Source of the DNA: Hypanus sabinus | Taxonomy: Eukaryota | NCBI RefSeq assembly: GCF_030144855.1 | Contig: NC_082721.1 | Coordinates: 30,814,001-30,878,000, forward strand | Direction of reading: 5' to 3' | Length of the DNA stretch: 64,000 nt | Shown here: positions 1,798 to 40,546 of the stretch, one piece after another | Layout of the letters: each line of letters begins with the position of its first letter | Numbering within the stretch: position 1 is the first letter of the stretch | Made by a program: the position numbers and the translations under genes | Notes under the pieces: generated by a model | What the model saw: the letters and a program-made list of their open reading frames with translations, nothing else | Database searches by the model: none | Told to the model about the DNA's origin: nothing

Positions 1798-1988
1798 CTG
1801 AAAAAGATCGCAATTTTTGATGCAGGTTAAACAATTTGTTGAAAATATTTTCAAAAATCCCTTTGAGTAAATCAAACCTGCTTCTAATGAAAATAACCAA
1901 CTTTACTGCATTGGGAAGTAGCAAGGAGATTCACATGTTGCCCAGATTGGAGGGTTTTAGTAATGGAAAGAGGATGGATATAAGATGG

Positions 1989-2223
1989 ACAACACACACA
2001 AAATGCTGGTGGAACACAGCAGGCCAGGCAGCATCTATAGGGAGAAGCGCTGTCGACGTTTCGGGCTGAGACCCTTCGCCAGGACCTCGTCTGAATCTGG
2101 GTCTCGGCCCGAAACGTCGACAGCGCTTCTCCCTATAGATGCTGCCTGGCCTACTGTGTTCCACCAGCATTTTTTGTGTGTTGTTGTTTGAATTTCCAGC
2201 ATCTGCAGATTTCCTCATGTTTG
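1989..2223. mobile_element. Fold-back PLE-terminus mini-element (inverted pair) inserted in a CR1 remnant
   Basis: Arms about 1989-2074 and 2099-2184 are nearly perfect reverse complements. 13-bp TSD ggatataagatgg at 1976-1988 and 2224-2236. Confidence 0.85.
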
Positions 2224-4467: not shown

Positions 4468-4702
4468 ACATGAGTGAATCTGCAGATGCTGGAAATAAAT
4501 AAAAACACAAAATGCTGGCAGAACTCAGCAGGCCAGACAGCATCTATGGGAGGAGGTAGTGACGACATTTCGGGCCGAAACCCTTCATCAGGAGTCTGTT
4601 GCGTCGCTTTTATCGAATCCTAATGAAGGGTTTTGGCCCGAAAAGTCGTCACTACCTCCTCCCATAGATGCTGTCTGACCTGCTGAGTTCTGCCAGCATT
4701 TT
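4468..4702. mobile_element. Fold-back PLE-terminus mini-element (second subfamily)
   Basis: Inverted arms about 4509-4593 and 4618-4702, each with a hammerhead-like core. 14-bp TSD atatttaaaaacca at 4454-4467 and 4703-4716. Confidence 0.85.
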
Positions 4703-5073
4703 ATATTTAAAAACCATCTGCCTTTGAGTATCACCGAAAATTCAAATATACTTTGCAATAACCTTGAATTTCTGTTAGATGTCAAGAGCATTTCTGAAAT
4801 GCCACATGTTTACATAAATTTAGAAGCCTGAAAAATTATCCTGTGGCCTTGCAAATTATGTAACTTTCAACTCTCCCCACATCCAATCCTGAAAAGGTAT
4901 AAGTTCTGACCACACCACATCTGTGAGCATACAATAAAGTAATTGGGGTGGCGGGGCTTGAGGCAATCCAGATCCACTGTCAGAAGAACTTAAGGTACAA
5001 GAATCGTATCTGTGACATGCAGCCAGGGTGAGCTTCAGATGCAATTGCTAAATGTTACCCAAATCATACTTAC

Positions 5074-5193: not shown

Positions 5194-6032
5194 CTGCATA
5201 TTTCATAGCAAAATGCATCACACTAGCAGTTCCAAATATAGACAATACAAATGATACCTGCTGTGGTTAACCCAAACCCACTACTAGATCATCTGCTGGA
5301 AAAAAAAACAAAGATAACTGTGTACAATTATTCCCCTTCACATCCCTCTGAACTCTCTGATTATTTATCTGGAAAAGTTCTAACTTTATAAGATTCAAGG
5401 AATGGCTCAAAACAAGTTTTAGCATTAGAGAAAGAAAATACACATTAGATCATACCACTTGGTAATAACCAAAATTGCCAAAAGGAGAGAAGTATGGGGG
5501 GGAGGAGAGAAGAATTTTGGCAGGCGACCCTGGAAGGAGGGACATGGGCCCAAGAAGGGTGGGGTGAACACAGAGCCCAAAGGAGGTTGCAGAAAATGGG
5601 GGACTGAGGGGGCACGAACCCAGGTAATGTTGGGGGGGGGGCAAGTTGAAGGGCCCGATCCGGACTCACGAGGGATTCTAACTCCTGACCTGGGATTGGG
5701 GAAATGCAGACATGGACCACGGTAGGGGTCGCAGACTCATATGGGGGAGTAGGGGTGGTAAATGGGAAGCACAAAGGTGGACGTGACGGGTGGAAGGGAT
5801 ACGATGGAGGTTGTATTGGGGGGAGGGGCACAGACCCCTTGAAGGGTGTGTGTGTGTGGGGGGGGAAGGGACACGGACCTGGGGGTGGGAAGGAATACGG
5901 ATCCGGGAATGGGGGGACGGGGGGGGGTGCGCGGACCTGCGGTGGGGGGGGGGGGGGTGGTGGAGGTATAAGGAAGACGACACGGACAGCTGCGATCACA
6001 GGATCCGGCCCCGGGCTCGGCCGCCCGCTGAC

Positions 6033-6080
6033 CTGAGGAAGCTGCAGTGCGATCAGCAGTAGCCGTACTCCCAGCGCCAT
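6033..6080 (-). CDS. SPPL2B: SPPL2B coding exon 1 (signal peptide)
   Basis: aaaATGG Kozak context. Encodes MALGVRLLLIALQLPQ, followed by donor cag|gtcagc in phase 0 with exon 2. Confidence 0.88.
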
Positions 6081-6331
6081 TTTATAGCCCGCTCCTCCCC
6101 GCGTCCCTGCCGCGCCCACACACCCGGTCGAACCGTCCAAGGGCCAAGAGCAGCGAGGGTCGGTAACGGGGGGCGTCTGTTTACTTTCATTTACGTTTCA
6201 TTGTATTTTTTGGTCTCTAGAGCCGCTGACGGGAGACGGGCCTACGCCGGCAAACTGGCAGCCGGAACTCAGCTTGCCGGCCGGGGTTAAAGGTCTCTGC
6301 GGTTCGGAGGTCACAGGCTGCCGGCGCGGAG

Positions 6332-6337
6332 ATGGCG
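6332..6337 (+). CDS. LSM7: LSM7 coding exon 1 (MA)
   Basis: gagATGGCG|gtgagt, a consensus donor. Confidence 0.9.
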
Positions 6338-6608
6338 GTGAGTCTGGGGAGTACCTGGTGGGTGACGGGGAGTAAGGCCCCTGGGGATGGCAGAATGGAC
6401 TCTAAAACCACCCCGGGCTGCAGGGCGAGCCCAACTTTGTTCTCCTGTGTGTGTGGGCTCGTTTATGTCTGAGAGCCACCACTAGAAGCCGGTTGTTGAG
6501 CTTTGAGCAGCAACTTGGAAGAACGGTGGATTTACAGCAACGCGAGTTATCAGCGGCTCGGCCTTGTTTTATTTTACGCCATTAACAATTATATGTCTTT
6601 AAATATAG

Positions 6609-6699
6609 GATAAGGAGAAGAAGAAGAAGGAGAGTATTCTCGACCTTTCCAAGTACATAGACAAAACAATCCGTGTGAAATTTCAAGGAGGGCGAGAAG
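6609..6699 (+). CDS. LSM7: LSM7 coding exon 2
   Basis: 91 nt, tag|GAT...G|gtatcg. Encodes DKEKKKKESILDLSKYIDKTIRVKFQGGRE. Confidence 0.97.
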
Positions 6700-8384
6700 G
6701 TATCGTTTGATGATTTGTTTAATATATAATATCTCGTGTAAAATGCTTTGAGGTTTACGAAACTTTATTCTAGGAGGTGAAGTCTGAACCCCCCACCTCC
6801 ACCACCACCACCACCTCCGTCTTGGGGAGCTTGGAGAAGGAAGAATGTTGGCGGCTATGAATTAGGTGGGCAGGGTATGGGGGTGGAATTGAACAGAGTC
6901 CTTAAATATGTCATGGATGAAGTCAAGATCTTACGGCTTATTCTTCACGGCAGTAAGATATTCAAATTCATTTTTAATTGAAGGTCATTTTAAAGTCTAT
7001 GTGGATAATATATGTACTATTTGGCCCAAGTAATTCATTGTATTTAAACACTCCTTGCAGCAAACTATCTCGGGTTCTCTGAACTCAAACATAACAAAGT
7101 TTATTTTGAGTTGCCTGTTTGATTTTTTTCCCTATCTCTGCTTTTCCTGCTATTAGAAGCATTCTGTATTTTATGACAGGTTTCAACATTTTAAAGCACT
7201 CTTGGGTTAGCATTTAAGCTATCTCTTCAAGATAAACGGTAAACATACTCATTTGGCAACATATGTCACAAACTGTTAGAAAATAACCTCATGCAGCAAT
7301 GAAGTTTACCATATGGCATCCTATGACATTACTTTTGCCAATTCCTCCATTATCATTTCTATTGACCAGAAATAGTGGGACGGAGGATGGATATCCTGTG
7401 GCATAGCACTTATGTCCTGATGCCCCAAGGGCTTTTCACCATGGACAAGGCACAAATTAAAGAGTAATGTCTTATTTTCCACTTGTCTGGATGAATGCAG
7501 TTCCAATCATTTTCAAGAAGCTCAACACCATTCAGCACAAAGCAGCTCCCGTGAACCATCCCCATAAATTTACACCACTGGCTTGGCATCTGTTTTTGAT
7601 GATAGTGTACTGTAGTTGGTCAACCAGATCATTCTAGCTGGTATCTCTCAAACCAAGAAGGGTAGAGGCAGGAGATAGATGGGAAAACGCAATTTGGATT
7701 CTCTTCCAAGTTGTTCACCATCTTGATTTGAAAATATATGGCTTGTCCTTCATTGTTGCTGGATTCCCTATCTAACTGCACTGTAGGAAAAGGACTATAG
7801 CAGGTCAAGAAGATGGCTCATTGTCACATTCTTACGGGTATTTAGGAATAGATAGTAAATGAAGTTTTTTTTTCTGCAAACCGTATGTCATAAAATGAAT
7901 CAAGATTGAAAAAAATGAATAAAACTGTTGGAATTTATTTGCAAAGAATATGCCTATTCTGTACTTCTATTGCATTTTTATTTAAAATCTTTTAACAGGA
8001 GTCTGCATTACCTGAAATAGAATTGCTAAAATGGAAGTATGATTGTTTGCACTGTTGTAACTATATGTTGTAACTATGTGGTTTTGTGCAGGATGTGTAG
8101 CTTTAGTTTTTGGCCTTGTTTGTCTGGTGGGATTGGAGCTCCTTTCTGGGGAACATGCTAAGATGGTAGCGTGATATTAATACGCAGCAGCCTCTCCGGA
8201 CTCTGAATTGGGGATTGCCAAACGTTATGTGGATTTTCTGGTGTAGTCTGTTTTGTCATGTGCTTTTGTGATATCATTCTGGAGGAACGTTGTCTCATTT
8301 TTTAACTGCATTACATTTGTGGTTTCTAAATGACAATAATCTGAATATAATACTGATTGGCGTAATTTTTCTTTTCTTCCACAG

Positions 8385-19921: not shown

Positions 19922-20023
19922 CTATGCTGCTTTTGTATCGATGAGATGCAGAGTCTGAATACTAATTGGCATGGTATCACCGTAGCCACCCTTAGATTTC
20001 ATTAAGCCATATACATCATTTAA
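19922..20023 (-). CDS. CDC42 small effector (SPEC) family protein, coding exon 3 to stop
   Basis: ttttgtgacag| encodes LNDVYGLMKSKGGYGDTMPISIQTLHLIDTKAA*, matching the CDC42SE2 C-terminus pattern MQSKGGYG...L.DTKA. Confidence 0.9.
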   Translation of the reverse strand, partial: LNDVYGLMKSKGGYGDTMPISIQTLHLIDTKAA

Positions 20024-20809
20024 CTGTCACAAAACAAAAATGGTTTATTAATTAGATAAGTCTACTGTTTAAATGTTGCATTGTCAGAACGTTCTTATGA
20101 CTGATTTTCTCTCTCATTATTCTTGGGAGTATTTCTTACTTTCAGTTTAACTTGTTCAACATCCAAGTATGTTATTAAAATATCGTGGCTCTACCACCAA
20201 CTCCTTCAGAAGAAAGATCCAAGAATTGCCACTTCTGCAGTATTTGAGCCCAGAGCTAATCTGTCATTGTACAACAGTGATGGAAGCTGTCACTTTGCAT
20301 TTAAGGAGGTACCAGATTGAACCCACATCCTTTAAGTTAATTTAGGTACTAGGAGCAATTCTAGCTCAGCATGAAAAGATTTAGCTCTTCAAGATCGTTA
20401 TGCAGAAGCTATTGCCAAAATATGCACATGCTAGGTTAAGGTGGCACCTCCTCCTTACTTAATAATCAACATGTATTATCCCATTTATGAATATGACTGT
20501 ATCCAACAGAATTCAGGGAAGTTTGTGTGAAGGAAAGGGAGGAAAAAGAAACAAAACTATTTTTGACAAGATGCAATTCTACACCTGCTGGTCTGCATTT
20601 TCAAAGCTAGGTGGTGCCAGAATACAATCTTAACAAACTTCAGAAAGAAAGAATAGAGTCCAGTTTCTTTAAAATTCTCCTCTTCCTGTGCCCCAGGTCT
20701 TAAAATGGGAGGAACGGTATCCCTGAGTCACAGAAACTATTAATAGGATGGTAGACATGACCATAAAGTCCAAAAGGAAATCCAGATTTCTTCCCACATA
20801 CACACAAGA

Positions 20810-22780
20810 TACTGGAAACCCAGTGCAACGCACACAAATTGGAGGAACTCAGCAGGTCAGGCGGCATCGATGGAAACGAATGAACAGTCGACATTTCAGG
20901 CCGAGACCCTTCCTCAGGACTGGAAAGGAAGGGGGAAGATGCCAGAATAATAAGGTGGAGGGAGGTGAAGGAGTACAAGCAAGATGTTGATAGGTGAAAC
21001 CAGGTGGGTAGGGGAGAGGGGATGAAGAAAGAAGCTGGGAGATGGAAAAGACAAAGGGCTGGGAAAGAAAGGAATCTGATAGGAGGGGAGAGGACCATAG
21101 GAGAAAAGGAACACCAAGGGGAAAGTGTTAGGCAGGTGAAGAGGCAAGAGACCACAGTGGAGAACTGAAGAAGAGGGAAGGGGGAGGGTAAAAAAAAAAT
21201 TACAAGAAGTCGGAGAAATCAATGTTCACGCCAACAGGTTGGAGGTTACCTAGATGGAATATGAGGTGTTGGTCCTCCAACCTGAGAGGGGCCTCATTAT
21301 GGCAGAAGAGGAGGCCACGGACCAACATGTCAGAATGAGAAATGTAAAGGAATTAAAATGGTTGGCTACTAGGAAACGCTGCTTTTTGCAGATGAAGCAG
21401 AGGTGCTCAACAAAGTGGTCCTCCAGTCTACATTGGATCTTACTGATACAAAGGAGGCTACATCAGGTGTACCGGCTACAGTATACAACCCCAAAAGATT
21501 CGCAGATGAAGTGTTGTCTCTGCTGGAAGTACAGTTTGGGGCTTTGAAAAGAGGTGAGGGAGGAGGTGAATGGGCAAGTGCTGCTTGTAGGCATATGTGC
21601 CGGGGGGGAGGGGGGGATAGAAAATGGTCAAGAGAATCACTGAGAAAGTGGAGAGTTGGGGTTGGGGGGAGAGGAAAAGATGTATTTGGTGGTAGATCCC
21701 ATAGAAGATGGTGGAAGTTGCAGAAAATGGAGTGTTGGATGTCGGAGGCTCATTGGGTGGTAGGTGAGGACAAGAGGAACTCTCCCTGTTAAGGTAGCAG
21801 GAAGATTGGGTGAGCAAAGATGTCCAGGAAATGGAGAGATGCAGGTGAGGGCAGCATAAATGCTGGAAGGGAAACCCTATTCTTTAAAGGAGGGCGACAT
21901 GTTCTGGAAAGGAAATCTCATCCAAGGAAACAGATGGGGCGGAGAAGGAACAGAAAATAAAGAATGGCATTTTTGCAGGAGATGGGGTGGGAAGAGGTAT
22001 AGTCAAGATAGCCCTGTGAATCAGTAGGTTTATAAAAGATATTGGTAGACAATTTGTCTCAAAGATGGAGACAGGGAATATCAGAGAGGGAGATGTCAGA
22101 AATGAACCAAGTGAATTTAAAGGCAGGGTAGAAGTTGGAGGCAAAATTGATGAAATTGACGTGAAGCAGCACAAATGCAGTCAATATAATGCAAAAAGAG
22201 TTGGGGAACATGGACTGTTCCATGTGGGTGCCCATGGCTACACTGAGTTTGGAGAAAGTGAGAGGAGCCAAAAGAAAAATTGTTGAGGGCAAGGACTAGT
22301 TCCACCACACTGAGGAGGGTGGTGGTGAACAGCAACTGGTTGGGCCTGTTGTTAAGAAGCAGAGAGCTTTAAGGCCTTCTTGGTGGCAGATACAAGTGCA
22401 TAGGAACTCATCATTCATGGTGAAAATATGGCGATCAGGACAAGGGAATTGAAAGCTGCTGACGATATAAAGAGCACGTGAAGTGTTGCAGATGTAGGTG
22501 GGAAGGAACTGAACCAAGGAGAGTAAAATGGAGTCGAGGTATGCAGACACTAGTTCAGGCAGAAACAATGTGCCGATCTTGAGTAGGAGGTAGAAACAAG
22601 CAGTGTGGGGTAGGGGAACTTTGAGGCTGTTGGGAGATCTCCAGAGATGATGAGGTTTGTGATGGTGCAGGAGACAACTGCCTGATGGTCCCAAGTGAGG
22701 TCCTTTTCAAGGGGTAAGAAAGAGGTGGTGTCTGGGAGTTATCTTCTGACCTCAGCAAGGTAGAGGTCAGTCCCCCACAC
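20810..22780 (-). mobile_element. Degenerate Penelope-like element (RT, GIY-YIG and pLTR)
   Basis: Fragments VAMGTHM and FINFASNFYPAFKFTWFISD (PLE RT). Terminal hammerhead motif at 20885-20922: cagtc-CTGAGGA-a-gggtctcggcct-GAAA-tgTC-gactg. Confidence 0.8.
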
Positions 22781-24965
22781 TACAACTCATACATATTCCC
22801 ACATTGGCACAACATTGTGGGCCGAACTGTGCTGTACTGTTCTATGTTCTATACCTATTTAGAAGTTCAGTTAAATTCCTTTTAATCTTTGGTCCTTCGT
22901 ATCCTGGTTGAAACTCACCCAGGATTATTTGTGCCATGGCGTGTAGTAGCTACCACTGCCATCTCAGATACAGGGATCTCAGGTGCTCTCTGTGATTTCT
23001 GTTGGGCACTTTGGCATTGTCCTACATCCAAAGTCTGGGTTGTAGGGGTTGAGGTAGAAGGGAGATTGGATAGGGTGCATCTGTTTTCTTTGGAGTATAT
23101 ACAACCATAAGATATAGGAGCAGAATGAGGCCCATCGAGCCTACTCCACCATTTTATCATGGTTGACTTATTTTCCTCTTCAACCTTATTCTCCTGCTTT
23201 CTCCCCCATATCCACCACTCTCTAACTAAAGGAATTTCTCATCTGTTCTAAAAGGATGTCCTTCTGGTCTGTAGATTTCAATGAGATCCTCACCTCATTC
23301 TTCTAAACTCCAGTAAGTACAAGCCCAGAGCCACCAAATGCTCCTCATATGTTAACCATTTCATTCTTGGGTTCATTCTTTTAATCCTCCTCTGGACCCT
23401 CTCCAATGCCAGTACATTCTTCCTGCCCAAAACTGCTTATAATACTCCAAATGTAATCTGAGCAATGTCTTATATAGCTTCAGTATTACATCCTTGCTTC
23501 TATATTCTAGGCCTCTCAAAGCAAATGCTAACATCACATTTGCCTTCTGTACTACCGACTCAACCTCTGAGTTAACCTTTAAGGAAGCCTGCACTGGGAC
23601 TCAAGTCTCCTTGCACGTCATTTAGAAAATAGTCTATGCATTTATTCCTTCTACTAAGTGCACGGCCATACACTTCCCAATATGCCTGTAGCCGAGATGT
23701 GATATGATCACCTGCAAAATGGGGTCTCATTTGCCAAACTGCTGTTTATAGACTTCAGTTTGGCTTCCAACTGGTATGGAAGCAGTCAAGCTTCAGACCA
23801 GAAGTCCCTATAAAGGATCTCACTACCATCCATCGGGGACATTTATCAGGAGTGCTGTATATGCAAGGCCCTTCATATCATTAAGGATCCTATTCATCCA
23901 TTCAGCATCATCTGACTTTCTACCATCAGGCAAGAAACGATAATACAGAAAAACAGGAATGGTCAGGATGAGAAACAGTTTCTTCCCCAGGCCATTAGGC
24001 TTCTGAACTCCCTGCTGCATTGTATTCTAAGTGGCACTGGTTAAACTATTCTGTAGCTTAGAATATTTAATAATTAATGCACATTGTTATTTATGTGTGA
24101 TTTATTTGTAGACTGTATCCTTACCTTCATAAGTTAGTGTGTTATGCGTACTATTGTGCTTTACACCCTGATATGGAGAAAAATTGTCTCCTTTCTATAT
24201 ACATTAGATAGTTATTTACATCTATGCATGCATATAGTTAAATGACAATAAACTTGATTAGACTTGCTATGATAGAAGTTCTATCATATCATAGAAGTTG
24301 CTATGAGAGGCATAGATATAGTAGATAGCCAAGTCCGATCCCTATGATAGGAGTGTCCAAAACTAGAGTACCTTGATTTTACGTGAGAGCTGCCAGTGGA
24401 CAACAGAACACTTATCTGGATGGGTTTCTGACTGGCATAGGAGGATATGGAATTAATGCCGAAAATGGGATTATTATAGAGAGGCACAATATTTGACACA
24501 GTGATTCACAGGGCCTATTTCTAAGCGGTACAAATCCATGACAAGCTAGTAAATTACACCAGTTAACCTCAAAGGCAAGTCAACCAAAGGTAAAGCTGAT
24601 GGGCATTTCTACCCATCTTACACAACAAGTGAAATTCTTGGATTCTGTGTGCCAAAGGGACTGTTTCTTTGCTATGGTAAAATTCTACTGAGTAGAATTG
24701 TAAATCAATTAAGTGATCCTCTTGTAATCAGCAATAACAAATACTTAAAAACAAAACAAAAATTACTTCAGCTGTTGCTGCCTTCCTTTACAAGAAATTT
24801 CCAATCTTTGATGACAGAAGACTGGCACACATGTTAAAAAGATCACTATGACTGATCTCTTATGGCCTGTGAGATGTTGGCTTGCTCATTCTCACACCAT
24901 TGCAAAGCAGACAAAAATAGTTGAAAAAATCTAGTAACCTTTCAAAATAGCTGAGAGAAACTTAC

Positions 24966-25070
24966 AGAGTTAATTTGATTCCCTAATGTATCTCCAGTCC
25001 CCATGTGTGATGTATGAACAAAATTTGTTGGCTCTCCAATCATGCTTCTATCTATTCGCCGCCGCCTTTT
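24966..25070 (-). CDS. CDC42SE-family coding exon 2 (CRIB domain)
   Basis: 105 nt, tttttacag| ... |gtaagt. Encodes [35 protein letters not shown], with CRIB motif [14 protein letters not shown]. Confidence 0.95.
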
Positions 25071-25495
25071 CTGTAAAAAGAATAAGGTACAAATATTAGG
25101 GATGTGGTCCTACTTTAATACACAGGCATGTCAGCAGTAAAGTGACATAACAGAAATAATGAATAATGTCTACTGCTAGGTTCTTTAGAAATGCCTTGCC
25201 CCATAAAATTACAATTATCAACCAGTTTAGTCTGAGAAGAAATAAAATGGAAGACAATAAATAAGCATCAGAACCATCATATGTTCCATATGGTTTCCCT
25301 CAACCTGGGCAATATAAATGCACTCTTAAGTACATCCTTGAATACAAAAGGTGGATGAGCTCCCTGTTCTAATCTCCTGTGGCTTCTCTATAGAAGGCAT
25401 ATAAAAATAAACTGAACAATCCAGTACTATACTTCTGAACATTATAAAATCAATAAACTAAACTCTGGGATTAATTCATTTAAAAGCATACTTAC

Positions 25496-25549
25496 TGGCC
25501 TTGGTTGTTCTGCAATGCAGCAGTTGAAACATAACCAGAATTCACTCAT
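25496..25549 (-). CDS. CDC42SE-family coding exon 1; protein 86 aa total, CDC42SE2-like
   Basis: Encodes MSEFWLCFNCCIAEQPRP, then |gtaagt. The di-cysteine palmitoylation motif is present. Exon acceptor tttctttag| at 25610. Confidence 0.95.
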
Positions 25550-26015
25550 CCTTACACGATAACTTGCAATATTTGGCAAATTCAGAATCACTTGGCTATA
25601 ATTGCAGTCGCTAAAGAAACCAAGTGATGTGAATGTTATACAACACTCAGATTGTGCACATGCAGCCAGAATCCAACAGTCACAGGTAAACTTGTTATTG
25701 GTCTTTCATCTGAAGGTTTCTTCTTCCAATCATGGAGCAAGTTTGTGTTTCACCACTCTTACTATAACCAAATTGTAGAAACAATATAATTATTTGCATT
25801 AGTGAAACATGACGCTTAATTTCTACGATTACATATTTTGGCCCTGCATGATTAGACATCAATAGAATTCCAAATTTATGAGATGACCAATACTGCATTG
25901 CTTAAATAGAAAATACAGTTTCCACAGTTATAGGAACTCACCTGGCCAGGATTCACTGCAGGTAACATCACATCCACAACTACAATTCCAAGCTTCAAGA
26001 GCCACACTAGAATTA

Positions 26016-26087
26016 CAAATAGCAAGTCCACTAGTACGACACTCACTTTGTGAAAAGTGAGTGTCGTATAAGTGGACTTGCTATTTG
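26016..26087. repeat. Near-perfect 34-bp inverted repeat (hairpin with 4-nt loop)
   Basis: 26016-26049 versus 26054-26087 gives 32/34 Watson-Crick pairs; loop gtga. Confidence 0.9.
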
Positions 26088-28899
26088 CACTTTGTGAAAA
26101 GTGGCTCGTAATCTTACTCTAAATGACTAACCTATGATAATGGCTGGTTCTAAAGAACACCAGCACAATCCAATCCCCAAAGTCTGTATCAAGAATCCTA
26201 TTTTTGAAAGTGTCAGCATCTACAGGAAACCAAATGCCCTCAAGAGACAGGCTGGAAGCAAACAATGGACCCTGCCATGCATAATGAACCCATATCCCAG
26301 AAGCAATGACCACATCCTGGTCAGTAAATAGAAAAATCAGCAAAAAGGAATACAGAAAGCTTTGGAAATCCAAAACTTAGGTCAGGAAGATAAAATTTTG
26401 ATCAGAGAAGTTTCAAACAATTCAAAAGAGTAAACAAAGTATTATTTTTAAATTCCTTCAAACCTCTCTGATGGACATAACTGCAGGAAAATTAGATGAT
26501 ATGTAAGCACTATAATATGTTGCTCTCAGTCACTTAACAAACAAAGCAAAAACCCACCTGAAATACTGCAGAGCCAACTCTTTCAAATGGTGTATCTTTT
26601 GGACAAGACACAAAGTACTGCTAGGCACTGAGATTTATCTCTGCCTGCAGTGTTCATGGGAAACTGGATTTTCCATTGCCCAGTATTTTGGTAGCTTGCC
26701 CTATGACTCAGATGTCTGCAGCATTTTTTTTAAAATGGCTTTACACTGTAGTCACTACCCAGTTAGTCAGACATTGCAGAACACTAAAGTAAATATCTTC
26801 CAGAAAACTCTATTTGTTGGACCAAATATTATAGAAAAGTATCAACCCAGTACACAAGAGTGGAATGTTCACAATCCTTTCATAACTATTTGGTGACTAC
26901 ACAGAAGAGTCCCAGTCCAGCTAATTCAGTAGCTGAATCAGATCAGTTGTTTTGTGAAATTAGAGCAAGTTTCCCCTCCCCATAATTTGAGAAGCCACTG
27001 TTCTGAGCCATTTTAAATCAGATGAATTCTACGTACAGCAATATCAGCTGAATTCACAAGTACAAACGTTTGTAGGAATTTTTAGTTTTCAAAAGTTGTG
27101 TGAGTTCCATCTTAAAATTTTATCAAATCAAACACATTTGTGAGGATACCGCCTCAAATTTCTTAACTCAGATTTCCAGGGAATAAACTTCTTTAAAACA
27201 ATATCCTACAGTAGCATCACCCACCTTTACTAAAATAATGCTGTAGATTCCAAATCAACCCATTTTATTGGGACAAAACCTCATTAGGTTAGTTATATTT
27301 CATTATTTGGACATTGACTCATAAACACAGAAATCCACTACAATAAGAACCCTACTACAGGCTCGATTAGCCCTCCCTCCTTAATGCAGCAGAATCACTA
27401 GTTAGTAATGGGTCATTTGAACCACAACACATCCACCTTCCCTGATGAACACTAAATCCATTCATGTTGCAACCAAACAAAGGGTTAGCTAATCCAGTTG
27501 ACATGGTTCTGCTATGCGATTGATAAACCCACTGAGTCATAGTGCTAGCTTTGGTAAATTTAAGGAGTTGAGTAAATTGGGAAAGTCTGGTACATTAAAA
27601 AGGACTAAAAGGCATTGGATGTCTGAGCCAAGCAGCCATTTGAACGTCTGTATCTTATGACATCTACCACATCAACATGTTTAATTCCATATTTGGATCC
27701 TAACTTCAGTTCATCAGGATTTCCACCTGTGCTGTACTCTACTACTGTGAAAATAGAGAATGTGCACTAAAGGAGATTTAATGCTTAGATTAAGGTAACA
27801 AATTGCAGTAAATCTAAGTATTTTTTTCAAATACAAGGTAGCTTTATCAGTTTCTGAAAGTAATGACAAACTAACATCTACGTAGTCCCTAATCACAATA
27901 CCAAAACTTCTAAAGGCTCCGTAACTTTCCATCTCTGCCTACATTCATCAAAAACTATTTGCACTTGTATAGCACTTTGAAAATAGCAAAATACATTAAG
28001 ACAAGAATGGTCTGTAATTAATGAACCAACTTATTTTTAAGTTACATGTGCATAAAGCTGCTTCAGTTATTTATTTGGCTGAGTAAACTACAAAAGCAGG
28101 AGAGCGGTGAATTGCGCACCTCAATGAACACGTGGAAGCAGTAAAACTTATCTTTAAGTAGCAACGGGAAATTTAAAATTAGTATTATATCAGGGCGAGA
28201 AACTTTAGGCAAAGTTCAGCTATAATTAAACTTAGTTGTCTCTTACCTTCTCAAAAGTTTTCAACTAAATTCACAAATATGTAAACAATTATCACAATAA
28301 TAATTATCCGTGAATCGTATTATATACATCCTGTATGGACATCGTCGTTTATGTGTATTGGGTGTCCAGGGAGGAGTAGCACTTCGGGTGAGAGGGCTTA
28401 TCGTGTCCATTTTGGAGCAGCTCACTCACCTTTCATCCCCACCGGACACTCAGCTCTCACCTGTTGCTTCAAGTAGTTGTTTGCATGCCACACCCCGGTA
28501 TACCGCTTCAACATGCGGGCTAAACCAGATGAGCTAGGGACATGTCTATCCTAGCATATGAAGTCAGCTTCCGGGGACTAGGCAGATAGTATAGAGATCC
28601 AACGGCCAAAAAGGCGATTCTGCAACATTCGTGAAGAGCGAAGTGGCAAGGCACACAATTCGTGGTCATCTGCCGCAACTACGGAAGACCCTAGTTTGTA
28701 ACGACTATCCATACCACTGCACCCGGTCTTCCGAGGTGGAGCGTGGGGTTTCCACAGTGCAACGGCTTTTCCACTTTAAAAAAACTCCCCACTCAGGTTA
28801 CCTGTCATCGTTGGAATCGAAGGGCAACCAAGCCATTGGAATAGTGTTTTAAGGAAAGGATTACACTGAATTCTTGCCAATTATCTATTGTATCATTTC

Positions 28900-29600
28900 T
28901 GAATACATACCGAAAAGACAAACGAATACAAGTTTGTCACAGTGCAAACATCAATTTTCAACCGGCCGCTGCTAGTTTATATCAAGGACTTATTTAAACA
29001 ATGGACTCTACTCTATTTTCTAAGAACTGCAGTCAATCTCCAGCAACTCAAACCACTGCGGAGAAGGAAACGCACCGCAGCCTGCCGCGCACTCTGAGCC
29101 TGTTGGATAATGGATCGCCGCTATATTTGCATTGACGTCAGCAAAGACTGACTGCTGTGGAAGGAGTGGGTGGAACTCCAATCCATCGGATTTATTAACT
29201 TTAAAGCGCAGCAAAATAAAACACAATAGCAGACGATTGTCGTTTCTTTCAAGGATATCAAACACAAATTAGCACCTTCGCCAGCCCCAATCATTGGCCG
29301 CTCGATTTACCCTATTGCCCCTAGTACCCGCCTAGCTATGAACATTGACCAATTGTGACGCAACTATCGCCGTTCCCTTTGTTCTGAATGGTCCATTCCT
29401 TGTCAATCAACATCAACGGTTTTCCAGCCGGTCATCGCAGTATGCTGAACCAGCGGGATTTCAGGGAGCCTCACGCTATCTGAGGCTCTCCATCGGCGTC
29501 TCATGAGGGTCCTAATGCCGTCTTGCCCTGAAGCATTCGATTCACAGTGAATCCTCAGATCGCCCCAGGGGATCCAGATGATGTCATAAGAGAACATGAA
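28900..29600 (-). promoter_or_regulatory. CpG-enriched promoter and first non-coding exon region of the CDC42SE gene
   Basis: Full CRE TGACGTCA at 29133-29140 abuts octamer ATTTGCAT at 29125-29132. CCAAT/ATTGG pair at 29287-29297. Candidate donor tcg|gtatgt at 28911. Confidence 0.6.
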
Positions 29601-34814: not shown

Positions 34815-37560
34815 CATAGAAACATAGAAAACCTGCAGCACAATACAGGCCCTTTAGCCCATAATGCTGTGCTGAATATGTACTTACTTTAGAAGTTACC
34901 AAGGTTTACCCAAAGCCCTCTATTTTTCTAAGCTCCATATACCTATCCAAGAGACTCTTAAAAGACCCTATTGAATCTGCCTCCACCACTGCTGCCGGCA
35001 GCCTATTCCACACACTCAACACTCTCTGCATAAAAACTTACCCGACATCTCCTCTGTACCTACTCCCCAGCACCTTAAAACTGTGCCCTCTCGTGTTAGC
35101 CATTTCAGTCCTGGGAAAGAGCCTCTGAGTATCCACATGATCAATTCCTCTCATCATCTTATCCACCTCTATCAGGTCACTTCTCGTCCTCCGTCACTCC
35201 AAGGAGAGAAGGCCAAGTTCACTCAACCTATTCTCATAAGGCATGCTCTCCAATTCAGGCAACATCCTAGTAAATCCCCTCTGCACCCTTTTTATAGTTT
35301 CCACATTCTTCCTGTAGTGAGGTGACCAGAACTGAACACAGTACTTCAAGTCGGATCTGATCAAGATCTTATATAGCCGTAACATTATCTCTCAGCTCTT
35401 AAACTCAATCTCACAGTTGATGAAGACCAATACATCATATGCCTTCTTAACCAGAGTCAACCTGCACAGTAGCTTGGAGTGTCCTATGGACCCCAAGATC
35501 CTTCTGATCCTTCGCACTGACTCTTACCATTAATACTATATTCTGCCATCGTATTAGACCTACCAAAATGAACCACATCACACTTATCTGGGTTGAACTC
35601 CATCTGCCACTTGTCAGCCCAGTTTTGCATCCTATCAATACCCCGCTGTAACCTCTGACAGCCCTCCACACTATCCACAACACACCCAACCTTTGAGTCA
35701 TCAGCAAATTTACTAACCCTTCCCTCCACTTCCTCATCCAGGTTATTTATAAAAATCACAAAAAGGGGTCTCAGAACAGATCTCTGGAGCACACCTCTGG
35801 TCACCAACCTCCATGTTGAATATGACCTGTCTACAACCACTCTTTACCTTTTGTGGGCAAGCCAATTCTGGATCAACAAGGCAAGGTCTCCTTGCATCCC
35901 ATGTTTCCTTAGAAATATCAAAAACCTACAGCACAATACAGGCCCTTCAGCCCACAAAGCTGTGCCAAACATGTAAATACTCTTCTTGGAACTTGGCTGA
36001 TTTTTCACAAAAGGATGAGAGTTTATGAATCAGTTTTAACAGTGAAGGCCAAAATGATTGGCTTAAGAAACAATTAGATGCTTTTCTGGAGAATGAAAAG
36101 TTAAATTCCTATATATAATAATCTTTATTGATATTAGATGAAGGAATTTAACTTAAGACGCTGAAGTTTCCTTAATAAGCCTCGCATTGGGTACCTTATC
36201 AAATGCCTTGCTGAAATCCATATACACTACATCTACTGCTCTACCTTCATCAATGTGTTTAGTCACAGCCTCAAAAAACTCAATCAGGTTCATAAGCCAC
36301 AAGCTGCCTTTGACAAAGCTATGCTAACTATTTGTAATTATATTATGCTTCTCTAAATGTCATAAATCCTGCATCTCAAGATCTTTTCCATCAATTTACC
36401 AACCACTGAAGTAAGACTCACTGGTCTATAATTTTCTGGGCTATCTCTACTCCCTTTCTTGAACAAGGTAACAACATCTACAAACTTCCAATACTCCGGA
36501 ACCTCTCCTGTCCCCATTGATGATGCAAAGATCATTGTCAGGGACTCAGCAATCCTCGCTTCCCACAGTAGCCTGGGTTATAATCTCGTCCCAGTGACTT
36601 ATCCAACTTGATGCTTTCCAAAGGCTCCAGCACATCCTCTTTCTTAACGTCTATCTGCGCTTTTCAGTCTGCTGTAAGTCATCCCTACAATCGCCAAGGT
36701 CCTTTTCCATAGTGAATACTGAAGCAAAGTATTCATGATGTACCTCCGCTACCTACTCAGGTTCCATACACACTTTTCCACTGTCACACTTGATTAGTCC
36801 TATTCTCTCATGTCTTATCCTTTTGCTCTTCACATACTTGTAGAATGCCTTGGGATTTTCCTTGATCTTGCTCACCAAGGCCTTCTCATGGCTCCTTCTG
36901 GCTCTCCTATTTTCATTCTTAAGTTCCTTCCTGCTAACCTTATAATTTTCTAGATCTCTACCATTACCTGGTTTTTTGAACTTTTCTTAAGCTTTTCTTT
37001 TCTTCTTGACTAAATTTTCAACGGCCTTTTTACACCATGGTTCCTGTAACCTACCATCCTTTCTCTGAGTCATTGGAATGTACCTATGCAGTATGCCACG
37101 CAAATATCCCCTGAACATTTGCCACATTTCTGCTATATGTTTCCCTGTGAACATCTGCTCCTCATTTATACTTCCAGGTTCCTGGCTGATAGCTTCATAT
37201 TTCCCCTTACTCCAATTAGACGTTTTCCCAACTTGTCTGCTCCTATCCCTCTCCAATGCTATGGTAAAGGAGAGAATTGCGATCACTATCTCCAAAATGC
37301 TCTCCCACTGACAGACCTGACATCTGACCAGGTTCATTTCCCAATACCAGATCGAATACAGCCTCTCCTCTTGTAGGCTTATCCACATATTGTGTCAGGA
37401 TACCTTCTTGAACTCACCTAACAAACTCCACCCCATCTAAACCCCTTGCTCTAGGGAGATGCCAATCAATAGGGAAATTAAAATCTCCCATCACAACCCT
37501 GTTATGATTGCACCATTCCAGAATCTGTCTCCCTATCTGCTCCTCAATGTCCCTGTTACT
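34815..37560 (-). mobile_element. CR1 LINE, degenerate ORF2 (endonuclease C-terminus to RT) with a nested insertion
   Basis: Fragments ENYRPVSLTSVVGKLMEKIL, VSKFADDSKVG, WADKWQMEFNPDKC, LKYCVQFWSPHY. Tail (ttctatg)n at 34815. Confidence 0.85.
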
Positions 37561-38198
37561 ATTGGGTGGTTATTGACTCCTTCCTGTTTCTAATTTCCAC
37601 CCACAGAGACTCAGTGGGCAATGCAATTGTGTTGCTGGGACTCTTGACCTCACAATCTACCTTGTTCTGATTTTGCGCCTGCACCACGCTTTCTTGTAGC
37701 TCCTGCACTTTATTCTGCATTGTTATTATTTTACCTTGTACCACCACAATGCACTGTGTATTTTAATGATTTGTAATGACTGTATGCAAGACAAGCTTTT
37801 CACTGTATCCTGGTATATTTAAAAATTATAAACCAACTCCAATATCTGTAATGATACAGAACTTGTAAATTTCAAGATTTACTTTTTCAGTTGTTTTCAT
37901 ATTAACTCCGTTTAGTCGGAAATAATGCCTTGTATTGTCAAAGCTGTTTACACGTTCTTCGTTTGACTGAACCAGGTTTCATTGCTACATTAAATATGAT
38001 TTAAAGGTGCTATCCCGGTTTGGGGGACCAGTATCACCCTTGTCACGCCATTAAAATAGGTCTGGAACTTTTTTGCCTGACCCGCTGAGTTCAAGCTGCA
38101 GCTTACTTTTTTTTTCGCTCTGGATGCCAGTCCGACTTGGCTCCGGTCACATCTGCTCCTTAAATCAAGCTAAATATAGAGCAGGAGGCCAAGGCAAA

Positions 38199-39099
38199 AT
38201 GGCTTGCGAGCCAACGGGCCACGGTGACAGGGAGCCGGCCGCCGACACCGTCCTGGAAGTCGGCCAGCGGCTGTTCCGTGTCAACAGGGGCGTGCTGTCG
38301 CGGGCCAGCGAGTACTTTCGGGCCATGTTCTTCGGAGGCTCCAGGGAAGGGTCTGAGCGCCACGTTGTACTGCGAGGCGTGGACCCCGAAGTCTTTAAGC
38401 TGCTGTTGGCCTTCGCAGTCGACGGCCGGGTTGAGATCAAGCGGGACAACGTGACGGCCCTGCTGGAGGCGGCCGATTTCCTGCTCTTCGACCGGCTGAA
38501 GCTGCTGTGCAGCGCCTTCCTGCAGCGGGAGCTGCACGTGTCCAACTGCCTGGGCTTCTGGGCCTACTCGCGACGCCTCGCGTGCCCGGGCCTAACGGCC
38601 GCCGCCCGCCGCGTCGCCCTCACACACCTGGAAGCCGTGGTCACCCACCAGGAGGAGTTCGCGCAGCTCTCCGAGGAGGCGCTGGTCGAGCTGCTGGCCA
38701 GCGACGACCTCTACGTGCGCAAGGAGGACGAGGTGTTCGAGGCCGTGGTGAAGTGGGCGAGCCACCGGCGCTGCAGGGAGGCAGCCTTGCTGCCGCTCTT
38801 GGGCTTGATGCGAGCCCCCTTCATGAGCCTCACGTTCCTGGACTTGCTGATCAAACGGTCCAAGCGCGGCAGCGAGGACGACACCTGCGCCAGAGTCCTG
38901 CAGATGTTGAACCGCAACCCTCCCCGCACCTGGTCGGCGACCCAGAAGAGCAGGCGCTACGAGACCATGTACATCCTCGGGGGAAGACATGAGCGCGAAC
39001 AGCAAGAACTCTTCCAGTTCTATCCTAAAAGCAACACATGGCAGGCCTGCTCTCCTCTCCGCCGCAGAAACCTCACTCAATACGCCGTGGCAGCAGTAG
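38199..39099 (+). CDS. Kelch-like (BTB-BACK-Kelch) protein, coding exon 1
   Basis: aaaATGG start. BTB: DTVLEVGQRLFRVNRGVLSRASEYFRAMF...LLEAADFL. BACK: NCLG...LLASDDL...EDEVFEAVVKW. First kelch repeat YILGG. Donor G|gtaact, phase 1. Confidence 0.9.
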
Positions 39100-39428
39100 G
39101 TAACTCAGCCTGAATTGTATATCAAACACCACGCATAATTCATCTCACGCCCTTAATACGCTTTGCGGTAATCAATAATCACCCATTCACTTAAATGCAA
39201 TAGAATTTTGTTTGTCGGTTTGCTTGACACTTTTATTTTCCGTCACCTCCATCCTTGTCTGCGTTGGCTGTGAACTGCTTCTGTTTCGCACACCCTGTGT
39301 GCCTGAGTCAAGCATAGAGAGCGTTTTATCTTCGGTTAACTGTAACATTCCGTTCAGTCATTCCAACGCACTTCTAGACCAGAAGCATCACTGATTTGGA
39401 TATGTTGTAGTTAAGGAAAGTGTTTTGA

Positions 39429-39562
39429 GCTTAGCCATTCCTGATGAAGGGTTTCGGCAGGAAACGTCGTCACTACCTCTTCTCATAGATGCTGTCTGGC
39501 CTGCTGAGTTCTGCCAGCATATTGTGTTTTTATTTTTTTCCAGCATCTGCAGATTCACTCGT
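39429..39562 (+). mobile_element. Short PLE 3'-terminus insertion with a damaged hammerhead motif
   Basis: CTGATGAagggtttcggcagGAAAcgTC at 39441-39468. 9-bp TSD gtgttttga at 39420 and 39563. Confidence 0.75.
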
Positions 39563-39642
39563 GTGTTTTGACTGCTGTAAAAGCTAAGCTTGCACCTGAA
39601 CAACGTGCTCCTACTGTTTTAAAATATTTACTTCCTATTAAA

Positions 39643-40546
39643 TCAGAAACAAGAGAATCTGCAGATGCTGGAAATTCAAGCAACACACACAAAATACTAG
39701 AGGAACTCAACAGGCCAGGCAGCATCTAGGGACAAAATTATAGTTGATGTTTCAGGCCAAAACCCTTCTGCAGGATTGGAGAAAAAAAGCTGAGGACTAG
39801 ATTTTAGAGGAGGGGGAAGGGGTGAGAGAACCACCATGTGTTAGATGAAACCTGAAGGGGGAGGGATGAAATAGAGAGCTGGGAAATTGGTTGGTGAAAG
39901 AGACAGAAGGCCATGGAAGAAAGTAAAAGGGGGAAAGAACACCAGAGGGAGGTGATGAGGTGAGAGGGGAAAAAGGGGATTCGAAATGGAGGGGGGGGGG
40001 GGCATTACGGGAAGTTTGAGAAATCAATGTTCATGCCAGCAGGTTGGAGGTTACCCAAACGGAATATAAGGTGTTGTTCCTCCAACCTAAGTGTGGCCTC
40101 ATCACAACAGTGGAGGAGGTCATGGATGGGCATATCGGAAAGGGAAGTGGAATTAAAATGGGTGGCTACTGGGAGATCCCACTTGTTCTGGGGGATGCTT
40201 AGTGAAGCAGTCTTTCAATTTATGTCAGGTCTCACCGATGTACAGGAGGCCACACTCGGAGCACTGAACACAGTAAATGACCCCAACAAATTCAGTGAAG
40301 TGTCGCCTCACCTGGAGGGACTGTTTAGGCCCTGGGTGGTAGTGAGGGAGAAGGTGTAAGGATAGATGTAGCACTTGTTCTGCTTGCAAGGGTAAGTGCC
40401 AGGAGAGAGATCGCCGGGGGGTGGGGGGGATGATGGACAAGGGAGTCGCGTAGGGAGCAAACCCTGCAGAAAGCAGTAAGTGGTGGGGGAAGGAAAGATG
40501 TTTTTTCATAGATGCTGCTTGGCCTGCTGAGTTCCTCCAGCATTTT
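39643..40546 (-). mobile_element. 5'-truncated Penelope-like element with an inverted terminal copy
   Basis: GVIYCVQCSECGLLYIGET (GIY-YIG). 40507-40546 is an inverted copy of about 39691-39728. 8-bp TSD ctattaaa at 39635 and 40547. Confidence 0.82.

What the first reader, a model, noticed from the sequence alone, without database searches (positions are those of the whole stretch)
25999..26107. Near-perfect 34-bp hairpin with a replication template-switch signature, a candidate de novo miRNA precursor
Seen: arm 26016-26049, loop gtga, arm 26054-26087 (32/34 paired). The self-complementary apex 16-mer cactttgtgaaaagtg (26044-26059) is repeated exactly right after the hairpin (26088-26103). The flanks gagccac (25999) and gtggctc (26101) can also pair. 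This is the pattern expected if the nascent strand folded at cacttt/aaagtg, copied itself for 28 nt, then resumed at the apex. It is not a recognisable transposon. It lies in the 5' transcribed region of the CDC42SE gene, just upstream of a strong donor cag|gtgagt near 25942, so it may be exonic. Established: template switching can create miRNA-like stems in one step, and about 35 bp is the stem length Microprocessor prefers. The 4-nt loop is shorter than optimal.
Basis: partly seen in the sequence, partly recalled or inferred. Interest (0 to 1): 0.7.

Follow-up and report, generated by a model that had tools for sequence, protein, structure and literature searches.

The report
Young template-switch palindrome in ray gene
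A 72-base near-perfect DNA hairpin beside a small ray gene is real and single-copy and looks like the product of one replication template switch, but three close relatives lack it in an unpredicted way and nothing shows it makes a microRNA, so it is an ordinary young palindrome.

Summary
Arms 26016-26049 and 26054-26087 pair at 32 of 34 positions around the loop GTGA. The 16-mer at 26044-26059 recurs exactly at 26088-26103. The RNA fold is about -67 kcal/mol on either strand (z = -12.5). The element is single-copy in the window and matches no Rfam family.

The window equals the exact one-step template-switch product of a hypothetical precursor lacking 26060-26103, apart from two adjacent bases (26069-26070). 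In the four-point model this is a "point 4 before point 1" event.

The sister-taxon test did not give the predicted allele. Contigs of three related organisms (about 98% identical) all skip 60 nt, 26032-26091, not the predicted 44 nt. The 16 nt they additionally lack has no template nearby. Their allele is therefore more likely a deletion derivative than the ancestor. No outgroup DNA could be fetched, so the direction of change is unresolved.

The hairpin lies in CpG-poor DNA about 400 nt upstream of the ATG exon of an 86-aa CDC42SE2-like gene on the minus strand, probably in a 5'UTR intron. The exonic claim has no support, and the microRNA claim was untestable and is a priori unlikely (about 0.3-2%). 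The scan noted one other template-switch-like hairpin elsewhere in this genome (s1-207163). Verdict: a real but ordinary new member of a known kind.

The parts
26016..26049 (.). Left arm of the palindrome (34 nt). In the template-switch reading it is the template.
26050..26053 (.). 4-nt loop: GTGA on the + strand, UCAC on the - strand, which is the gene-sense strand.
26054..26087 (.). Right arm. It is the reverse complement of the left arm except at 26069-26070.
26044..26059 (.). Seed quasi-palindrome CACTTT-GTGA-AAAGTG (6-bp inverted repeat with a 4-nt spacer). This is the first copy of the 16-mer.
   Evidence: family D2
26060..26087 (.). 28-nt inverted copy of 26016-26043, corresponding to fragment 2->3 of the four-point template-switch model.
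26088..26103 (.). Exact second copy of the 16-mer. It marks a return to the original template 16 nt behind the point of departure (point 4 before point 1).
   Evidence: PMC7954356
26032..26091 (.). The 60 nt absent from contigs of related organisms B, C and D. There is one joint, 26031->26092, with 1 nt of ambiguity and no letters in between.
   Evidence: tables 5 and 8
26032..26047 (.). 16 nt of the left arm that the relatives also lack. It has no templated source within +/-300 nt or anywhere else in the 64 kb.
25999..26005 (.). GAGCCAC, which pairs with GTGGCTC at 26101-26107. Both lie outside the 60-nt difference, so they are also present in the relatives.
26101..26107 (.). GTGGCTC, the partner of 25999-26005.
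25936..25943 (-). Donor-like AGGTGAGT. This is a consensus match only, and such matches occur at chance frequency in the window.
25496..25610 (-). Putative first coding exon of the CDC42SE2-like gene. The acceptor AG is at 25612-25611, the ATG at 25549-25547 and the donor GT at 25495-25494. It lies about 405 nt downstream of the hairpin in gene sense.

Best explanation
This is a single-copy, lineage-restricted, near-perfect palindrome made by one short-range template switch during DNA synthesis. It has no demonstrated function. Inferred mechanism: a precursor carried the 6-bp/4-nt quasi-palindrome CACTTT-GTGA-AAAGTG (26044-26059). After copying it, the 3' end AAAGTG paired with CACTTT on the nascent strand or on the opposite strand. 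The polymerase then copied 28 nt backwards (26043 to 26016). Synthesis returned to the original template at 26044, 16 nt behind the point of departure, so the 16-mer was copied a second time. This added 44 nt (26060-26103) and created a 34-bp stem in one step. It is a 3-2-4-1, '4 before 1' event, the class that looks like one large insertion in an ordinary alignment. Two adjacent bases changed later, or were miscopied during the event. The three related organisms carry a 60-nt shorter allele. I read that allele as a deletion derivative. The most likely route is that the palindrome arose before the split and was then removed in their common ancestor by a deletion that takes out its centre, as is usual for short-spacer palindromes. 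The less likely route is an independent 16-nt deletion of the precursor. The element lies in CpG-poor non-promoter DNA about 405 nt upstream of the ATG exon of a minus-strand CDC42SE2-like gene. The most likely context is a 5'UTR intron on the sense strand, where it would be transcribed as part of the pre-mRNA but is probably neutral.
For: Shown: the structure and its coordinates and stability far beyond chance. The window equals the one-step template-switch product of the 44-nt-shorter precursor except at 26069-26070. The element is single-copy, and its contig continues unbranched from unique flank through the palindrome. Organisms B, C and D each span the site with the same 60-nt skip. They share 11-12 fixed differences from the window over about 940 nt and have 3-4 private ones each. 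The 16 nt they lack beyond the copied part has no local template, with alignment scores no better than shuffles, so their allele cannot yield the window by local templated copying. CpG observed/expected is 0.17 around the hairpin. CpG islands lie at 28.0-29.5 kb and 38.0-39.5 kb. An AGGTGAGT donor on the minus strand lies inside the first island (28424-28431), and another (37412-37419) lies about 0.6 kb gene-sense downstream of the second. From the literature: '4 before 1' events exist and appear as single large insertions (PMC7954356). Template switching builds perfect stems in one step and made more than 6,000 such hairpins in primates (PMC10710096). Inverted repeats of 5-9 bp with 3-12 bp spacers can seed snap-back, and long-arm, short-spacer palindromes are the least stable (PMC7999016).
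Against: The precursor allele is hypothetical and was seen in no organism. B, C and D behave as one group against A, so there is no outgroup. Insertion in A and deletion in B/C/D are therefore equally parsimonious on the tree. The relatives read CCAC-TTG with two T's, whereas clean slippage between the CACT repeats (26029-26032 and 26088-91, or 26044-47) would leave three T's. Every scenario thus needs a 1-nt-microhomology end-join or one extra step. The junction 26087/26088 has no microhomology. Transcription through the site was not shown.
Confidence: 0.6

Rival explanations
1. The relatives' short allele is ancestral, and the whole 60 nt (26032-26091) was inserted in lineage A. This would be either one complex double-strand-break repair event (polymerase-theta-type end joining with about 16 nt of untemplated or distantly templated filler, then snap-back copying and re-annealing) or two successive events (a 16-nt insertion, then the template switch).
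For: Only organism A carries the palindrome, while three other organism labels carry the short allele. The outer 18 nt of the right arm (26070-26087) is the exact reverse complement of the relatives' sequence up to and including the T at their junction, one base more than its match to the window's own left arm. The short allele already carries a 6-bp mini hairpin, CCACTT/AAGTGG, that could seed snap-back.
Against: The inner 16 nt occurs on both arms and has no template within +/-300 nt or in the 64 kb. It would have to be added first and then copied. Both copies of the 16-mer have three T's where the short allele has two, which requires another step. The one-base-longer match has about a 1 in 4 chance of being coincidence.
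Confidence: 0.25
2. The hairpin is a working, or nascent, small-RNA precursor (a de novo microRNA or shRNA-like hairpin) processed from the host gene's pre-mRNA.
For: The stem is 34 bp, close to the 35 bp preferred by Microprocessor (PMC10710096). It probably lies in a sense-strand intron, the context of 81 of 99 intragenic template-switch microRNAs. On the gene-sense strand a UG sits at the basal junction (read; motif from general knowledge).
Against: The loop is 4 nt against the 10 nt or more that is preferred. The sense strand has no apical UGU/GUG and no CNNC in its 3' flank (read). There is no Rfam family match. The element is absent from three closest relatives, so it is not conserved. 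Runs guessed to be RNA hold 0 of 9 sampled words. The base rate in primates is 18-111 annotated loci out of more than 6,000 template-switch hairpins, or 0.3-2%.
Confidence: 0.03
3. It is a miniature inverted-repeat or fold-back transposable element, or the footprint of one.
For: The same window holds two large fold-back inverted repeats, at 1969-2204 and 4503-4708.
Against: No other copy of the arm exists in 64 kb at up to 3 mismatches. The 1-kb neighbourhood has only one 20-nt chance hit elsewhere in the window. The contig carrying it does not branch at its borders. The 60-nt difference has no target-site duplication: CACT flanks it, but the empty site is one base short of what a duplication would give. 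The ends of the 60 nt are not inverted repeats of each other.
Confidence: 0.02
4. It is an assembly or sequencing artefact, such as a fold-back chimera.
For: No single short-read contig bridges 26087/26088 with 31 nt on each side. All four organism-A runs lack the same 3 of 9 sampled words. Contig depth drops from 16.6 to 8.2 across the break.
Against: One contig from run data carries both arms and the loop with at most one differing letter (not located) over 439 nt. Another carries 15 nt of the right arm plus the second 16-mer and the flank, matching the window exactly. No loose ends or unlike continuations were seen. Six runs from six sample labels hold the words. Fold-back chimeras of long reads are kilobase-scale, not 34 bp (general knowledge).
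Confidence: 0.02

Closest known systems
Short-range template-switch mutations under the four-point model, '4 before 1' class (Walker et al. 2021, PMC7954356; Loytynoja and Goldman 2017)
   Same: The descendant equals the left part up to point 1, then the reverse complement of a nearby fragment (28 nt), then a restart at point 4. Point 4 lies behind point 1, so the change looks like one large insertion and leaves a perfect inverted repeat. Point 2 lies before point 1, so an intra-strand switch is possible.
   Different: The ancestral allele is inferred, not observed. The only relatives available carry a third allele, so the direction of change is unresolved, which is the pitfall that paper warns about.
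Template-switch-generated microRNA hairpins of primates and mice (Monttinen, Frilander and Loytynoja 2023, PMC10710096)
   Same: A 30-55-nt stem was created in one step and is lineage-specific. It probably lies in a sense-strand host-gene intron. It meets that paper's formal criteria of an inverted fragment of at least 15 nt explaining at least 5 differences.
   Different: There is no expression or processing evidence. The loop is 4 nt. The species is a cartilaginous fish, where no such case is on record in the papers I read. Only a small fraction of such hairpins become microRNAs.
Quasi-palindrome-associated template-switch mutation (the classic bacterial and yeast hotspot type)
   Same: It is seeded by a short imperfect inverted repeat with a small spacer, and the arms are extended by copying.
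   Different: Classic events correct a few bases between existing arms. Here the arm grows from 6 to 34 bp and the seed is duplicated.
Snap-back (fold-back) synthesis during end joining or break repair
   Same: A 3' end folds on a 5-9-bp inverted repeat with a 3-12-bp spacer and copies its own strand (PMC7999016).
   Different: That route would need a break and a rejoining that re-creates the 16-mer. Nothing here distinguishes a break from a replication fork.
MITE or fold-back transposable elements
   Same: It is a short hairpin-forming inverted repeat in non-coding DNA.
   Different: It is single-copy, has no target-site duplication and shows no similarity to the window's fold-back repeats.

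Membership tests
Short-range template-switch mutation (four-point model) | The descendant sequence equals L->1 plus the reverse complement of a nearby fragment 2->3 plus 4->R of the ancestor. | tested here: met
   the predicted product of the 44-nt-shorter precursor equals the window over 301 nt except at 26069-26070. The points are 1 = 26059, 2 = 26043, 3 = 26016 and 4 = 26044.
Short-range template-switch mutation (four-point model) | The inverted fragment is at least 15 nt and explains at least 5 differences (criteria of PMC10710096). | tested here: met
   The fragment is 28 nt and the event accounts for a 44-nt difference.
Short-range template-switch mutation (four-point model) | The pre-event allele is observed in related genomes. 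| tested here: not met
   organisms B, C and D lack 26032-26091 (60 nt), not 26060-26103 (44 nt). The predicted precursor was not seen in any of them.
Short-range template-switch mutation (four-point model) | The direction of change is resolved by an outgroup. | not testable with these tools
   B, C and D group together against A. The only other assembly with the same protein gave no DNA.
Canonical animal microRNA precursor | A stem of about 35 bp flanked by single-stranded basal segments. | tested here: met
   The stem is 34 bp with one 2x2 internal loop and is flanked by unpaired stretches of 8-13 nt on each side.
Canonical animal microRNA precursor | An unstructured apical loop of about 10 nt or more. 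| tested here: not met
   The loop is 4 nt. The requirement is as stated in PMC10710096.
Canonical animal microRNA precursor | Stacks of roughly 22-nt reads from both arms with Drosha/Dicer-type offsets. | not testable with these tools
   No small-RNA run was reachable, and the 31-letter word index cannot see 22-nt reads.
Canonical animal microRNA precursor | The locus is transcribed. | tested here: inconclusive
   Runs guessed to be RNA hold 0 of 9 words of 25985-26125 and about 0.04 of the words of 25700-26400.
Canonical animal microRNA precursor | A match to a described microRNA family. | tested here: not met
   Rfam 15 at E up to 10 gave only sub-threshold noise: mir-194 at 17.9 bits against a gathering threshold of 52. 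miRBase and MirGeneDB were not available.
MITE / fold-back transposable element | Multiple dispersed copies. | tested here: not met
   There are no other copies in 64 kb and the contig is unbranched. A genome-wide count was not possible.
MITE / fold-back transposable element | A target-site duplication flanking the element relative to the empty site. | tested here: not met
   The empty site in B, C and D reads CCAC|TTG. The CACT repeats flanking the difference would predict a 59-nt skip, not the observed 60 nt.

The most novel reading that the evidence does not exclude
The hairpin is a species-specific proto-microRNA or shRNA-like small-RNA precursor, born in one template-switch step inside the sense-strand 5' intron of a CDC42SE2-like gene of a stingray. 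Among the papers read here this would be the first such case outside mammals, caught while its closest relatives lack it.
Probability: 0.03. Interest if true: 0.6.

Novelty: new member of a known kind. Interest (0 to 1): 0.25.

Why it matters
The locus is a clean textbook example of how one replication error can extend a 6-bp quasi-palindrome into a 34-bp stem. It also shows why a sister species cannot simply be taken as the ancestral state. The relatives here carry a third allele that removes the centre of the palindrome, which fits a birth-then-deletion life cycle for short-spacer palindromes. Such palindromes are common, however. One count puts about 180,000 palindromes longer than 40 bp in the human genome, and template switching made more than 6,000 hairpins in primates. 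Without evidence of transcription or processing the locus has no demonstrated biological role. It would gain interest only if small-RNA data showed processing, or if population data showed the palindrome segregating against its deletion derivative.

Tried and rejected
- A run search restricted to 25985-26125 found only organism-A runs. The 60-nt skip in the relatives explains this.
- I tried to fetch orthologous DNA for an outgroup. The spliced 86-aa protein is on record in two NCBI assemblies, GCA_030144855.1 and GCA_048418815.1. The first has a gene span of 5,628 nt, the same as 19922-25549 here, so it is probably the source of the window. Neither file is served as DNA.
- The 84-aa spurious ORF next to the hairpin is not on record, so it cannot be used to pull relatives' contigs.
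- A protein search gave Mobula hypostoma (95%) as the nearest other species. That is too distant for intron alignment.
- Exact one-step template-switch solutions for relatives->window and relatives->precursor: none.
- A template for the 16 nt at 26032-26047: none within +/-300 nt or in the whole window.
- Both 16-mer copies are followed by TCGTA at slightly different offsets. I estimate the chance of this at about 5% and did not use it.
- Rfam and the bacterial-type promoter/terminator scan were uninformative.
- Searches of earlier findings by sequence and by words gave nothing on this element.
- From memory I believe GCA_030144855.1 is an Atlantic stingray (Hypanus sabinus) assembly. No tool confirmed the name, so I do not rely on it.
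Full report
**1. The observation**

- The left arm is 26016-26049, the loop GTGA is 26050-26053 and the right arm is 26054-26087.
- The arms are complementary at 32 of 34 positions. The only mismatch is the adjacent pair 26033-26034 (AG) against 26069-26070.
- The 16-mer CACTTTGTGAAAAGTG at 26044-26059 is itself a 6-bp inverted repeat around GTGA. It recurs exactly at 26088-26103.
- GAGCCAC (25999-26005) and GTGGCTC (26101-26107) pair as an outer helix in the predicted folds.

As RNA the 126-nt stretch folds to -67.2 kcal/mol (+ strand) and -67.6 kcal/mol (- strand). Dinucleotide shuffles give -26 +/- 3.3, so z = -12.5, and none of 200 shuffles folds as well. The arm has no other copy in the 64 kb at up to 3 mismatches. 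The 1-kb neighbourhood has only one 20-nt chance match elsewhere in the window. Only two other inverted repeats of 30 nt or more with a short spacer exist in the window. These are the large fold-back repeats at 1969-2204 and 4503-4708, and they are unrelated in sequence.

**2. Is it real DNA?**

- Six runs labelled organism A, from six sample labels of one study, hold the words of the region.
- In run X1, one contig runs unbranched from the unique left flank through both arms to 26088. A second contig starts at 26073 and carries 15 nt of the right arm, the second 16-mer and the right flank.
- The second contig matches the window exactly. The first has one differing letter over 439 nt, which the tables do not locate. 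Neither has loose ends.
- No contig bridges 26087/26088 with 31 nt on both sides. All four runs in the narrow search hold the same 6 of 9 sampled words. Contig depth drops from 16.6 to 8.2 across the break.
- I read this as loss of coverage at a strong hairpin, but I could not test that.
- These runs may derive from the animal that was assembled, so they are not fully independent.

**3. The sister-taxon test**

Contigs of three other organism labels (B, C and D) lie on 25650-26650.
- They show 15-18 substitutions each.
- 11-12 of these are shared by all three, and each organism has 3-4 private ones.
- They also share two small insertions.

Each organism spans the hairpin site with the same single joint, 26031->26092. 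This is a skip of 60 nt (26032-26091), with 1 nt of ambiguity and no letters in between. The relatives therefore read ...AAGTCCAC|TTGTGAAAAGTGGCTC.... They have one 16-mer-like motif with two T's instead of three, no right arm, and no inner 18 nt of the left arm.

It does explain why none of B to J held any of the 9 words.

B, C and D form one group against A, so the comparison is unrooted. Insertion in A and deletion in the ancestor of B, C and D are equally parsimonious on the tree. Walker et al. (PMC7954356) warn against exactly this error of taking a sister species as ancestral.

**4. What made it**

A formal check shows the following. Take the window minus 26060-26103, append the reverse complement of 26016-26043 after 26059, and restart at 26044. 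The result equals the window over 301 nt except at 26069-26070.

In the four-point model the points lie in the order 3 (26016), 2 (26043), 4 (26044), 1 (26059).
- Point 2 precedes point 1, so an intra-strand fold-back is possible.
- Point 4 precedes point 1. Walker et al. found many events of this class in great apes and note that they look like a single large insertion.
- The first switch has 6 nt of complementarity (AAAGTG on CACTTT). The return at 26087/26088 has none.

By contrast, the relatives' allele cannot give the window by one template switch. The 16 nt it additionally lacks (26032-26047) has no template within +/-300 nt or anywhere else in the window, with alignment scores no better than shuffles. 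Because this 16 nt occurs on both arms, it must have been in place before the arm was copied.

The simplest histories are therefore:
- (a) A precursor became the palindrome before the split, and the ancestor of B, C and D then lost 60 nt including the palindrome's centre.
- (b) The precursor was ancestral. A template switch occurred in A and an independent 16-nt deletion occurred in B/C/D.
- (c) The short allele was ancestral. A 16-nt insertion of unknown origin and then a template switch, or one complex break-repair event, occurred in A.

My rough odds are 45-50% for (a), 15-20% for (b) and 25% for (c).
- History (a) links the two events causally, because long-arm, short-spacer palindromes are the least stable (PMC7999016).
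- The 2-nt arm mismatch suggests the copy is not brand new.
- Expected substitutions on 88 nt since the split are about 0.7, if the roughly 1.5% divergence is shared equally between the lineages. This is inference.
- None of the histories gives the two-T junction by clean slippage between the CACT repeats. A 1-nt-microhomology join or one extra step is needed in every case.

**5. Context**

The gene on the minus strand encodes an 86-aa CDC42SE2-like protein.
- The exon with the ATG is at 25549-25496, preceded by an acceptor at 25612-25611.
- A second coding exon lies at about 25070-24966.
- A third lies at about 20023-19925, followed by the stop codon at 19924-19922.
- The spliced protein is on record with exactly this sequence in two NCBI assemblies. 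One has the same gene span as here.
- The nearest other species is Mobula hypostoma at 95%, so the window comes from a myliobatiform ray.

The hairpin lies about 405 nt upstream of the ATG exon in gene sense, and the acceptor in front of that exon implies an upstream non-coding exon. The DNA around the hairpin is CpG-depleted (observed/expected 0.17). CpG islands lie at 28.0-29.5 kb and 38.0-39.5 kb. A minus-strand AGGTGAGT lies inside the first island (28424-28431), and another (37412-37419) lies about 0.6 kb gene-sense downstream of the second.

It carries no weight by itself. The most likely reading is that the hairpin sits in a 5'UTR intron on the sense strand. This is inference and rests on no RNA evidence.

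**6. The microRNA idea**

For it:
- The stem is 34 bp.
- The likely context is a sense-strand intron.
- A UG sits at the basal junction on the sense strand.

Against it:
- The loop is 4 nt, where 10 nt or more is preferred (PMC10710096).
- The sense strand has no apical UGU/GUG and no CNNC (read; motifs from general knowledge).
- There is no Rfam match.
- The element is absent from the three closest relatives.
- Runs guessed to be RNA hold 0 of 9 sampled words.

In primates, template switching made more than 6,000 suitable hairpins, of which 111 are miRBase loci and 18 are MirGeneDB genes. That gives a prior of about 0.3-2%. I put the chance here at about 3%.

**7. Verdict**

The template-switch architecture holds formally. 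The predicted ancestral allele was not found, and the relatives carry a third allele whose polarity needs an outgroup. The exonic and microRNA parts are unsupported. This is a new member of a known kind of mutation product and is of modest interest. The scan also noted another template-switch-like hairpin elsewhere in this genome (s1-207163), which I did not examine.

Noticed in passing
window 19922-25610, minus strand: An 86-aa CDC42SE2-like gene in three coding exons: 25549-25496, about 25070-24966, and about 20023-19925 followed by the stop codon at 19924-19922. The identical protein is on record in NCBI assemblies GCA_030144855.1 and GCA_048418815.1, and the nearest other species is Mobula hypostoma at 95%.
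   Followed up: partly
window 5501-7000, 28001-29500, 38001-39500: Three CpG islands (CpG observed/expected 0.7-0.9, GC up to 0.67). A minus-strand AGGTGAGT donor consensus lies inside the 28-29.5 kb island (28424-28431), and another (37412-37419) lies about 0.6 kb gene-sense downstream of the 38-39.5 kb island. Both islands are candidate first exons or promoters for the CDC42SE2-like gene.
   Followed up: partly
window 26272 and 26542: Organisms B, C and D share a 10-nt insertion (AGCAATGAAA) after 26272 and an AT insertion after 26542 relative to the window. Together with the 60-nt difference, that makes three indels in 1 kb on the branch between A and B/C/D.
   Followed up: no
window 26073-26088: The contigs of run X1 break inside the right arm with only a 16-nt overlap, and their mean word depth drops from 16.6 to 8.2. 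All four organism-A runs lack the same 3 of 9 sampled words. This may be coverage loss at the hairpin or heterozygosity; it was not resolved.
   Followed up: partly
window 1969-2204 and 4503-4708: Two large fold-back inverted repeats, with arms of 106 nt and 94 nt that are 89-93% complementary and spacers of 24 and 18 nt. They are unrelated in sequence to the hairpin studied here.
   Followed up: no
window 26005-26010 and 26029-26034; 26060-26068 against 26104-26110: The 6-mer CACTAG recurs 24 nt apart, the second copy ending on the two mismatched bases. Both 16-mer copies are followed by TCGTA at slightly different offsets. Both observations are at about chance level.
   Followed up: partly
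window 39537-39674: A 26-nt inverted repeat, 92% complementary, with an 86-nt spacer, lying just past the edge of the 38-39.5 kb CpG island.
   Followed up: no
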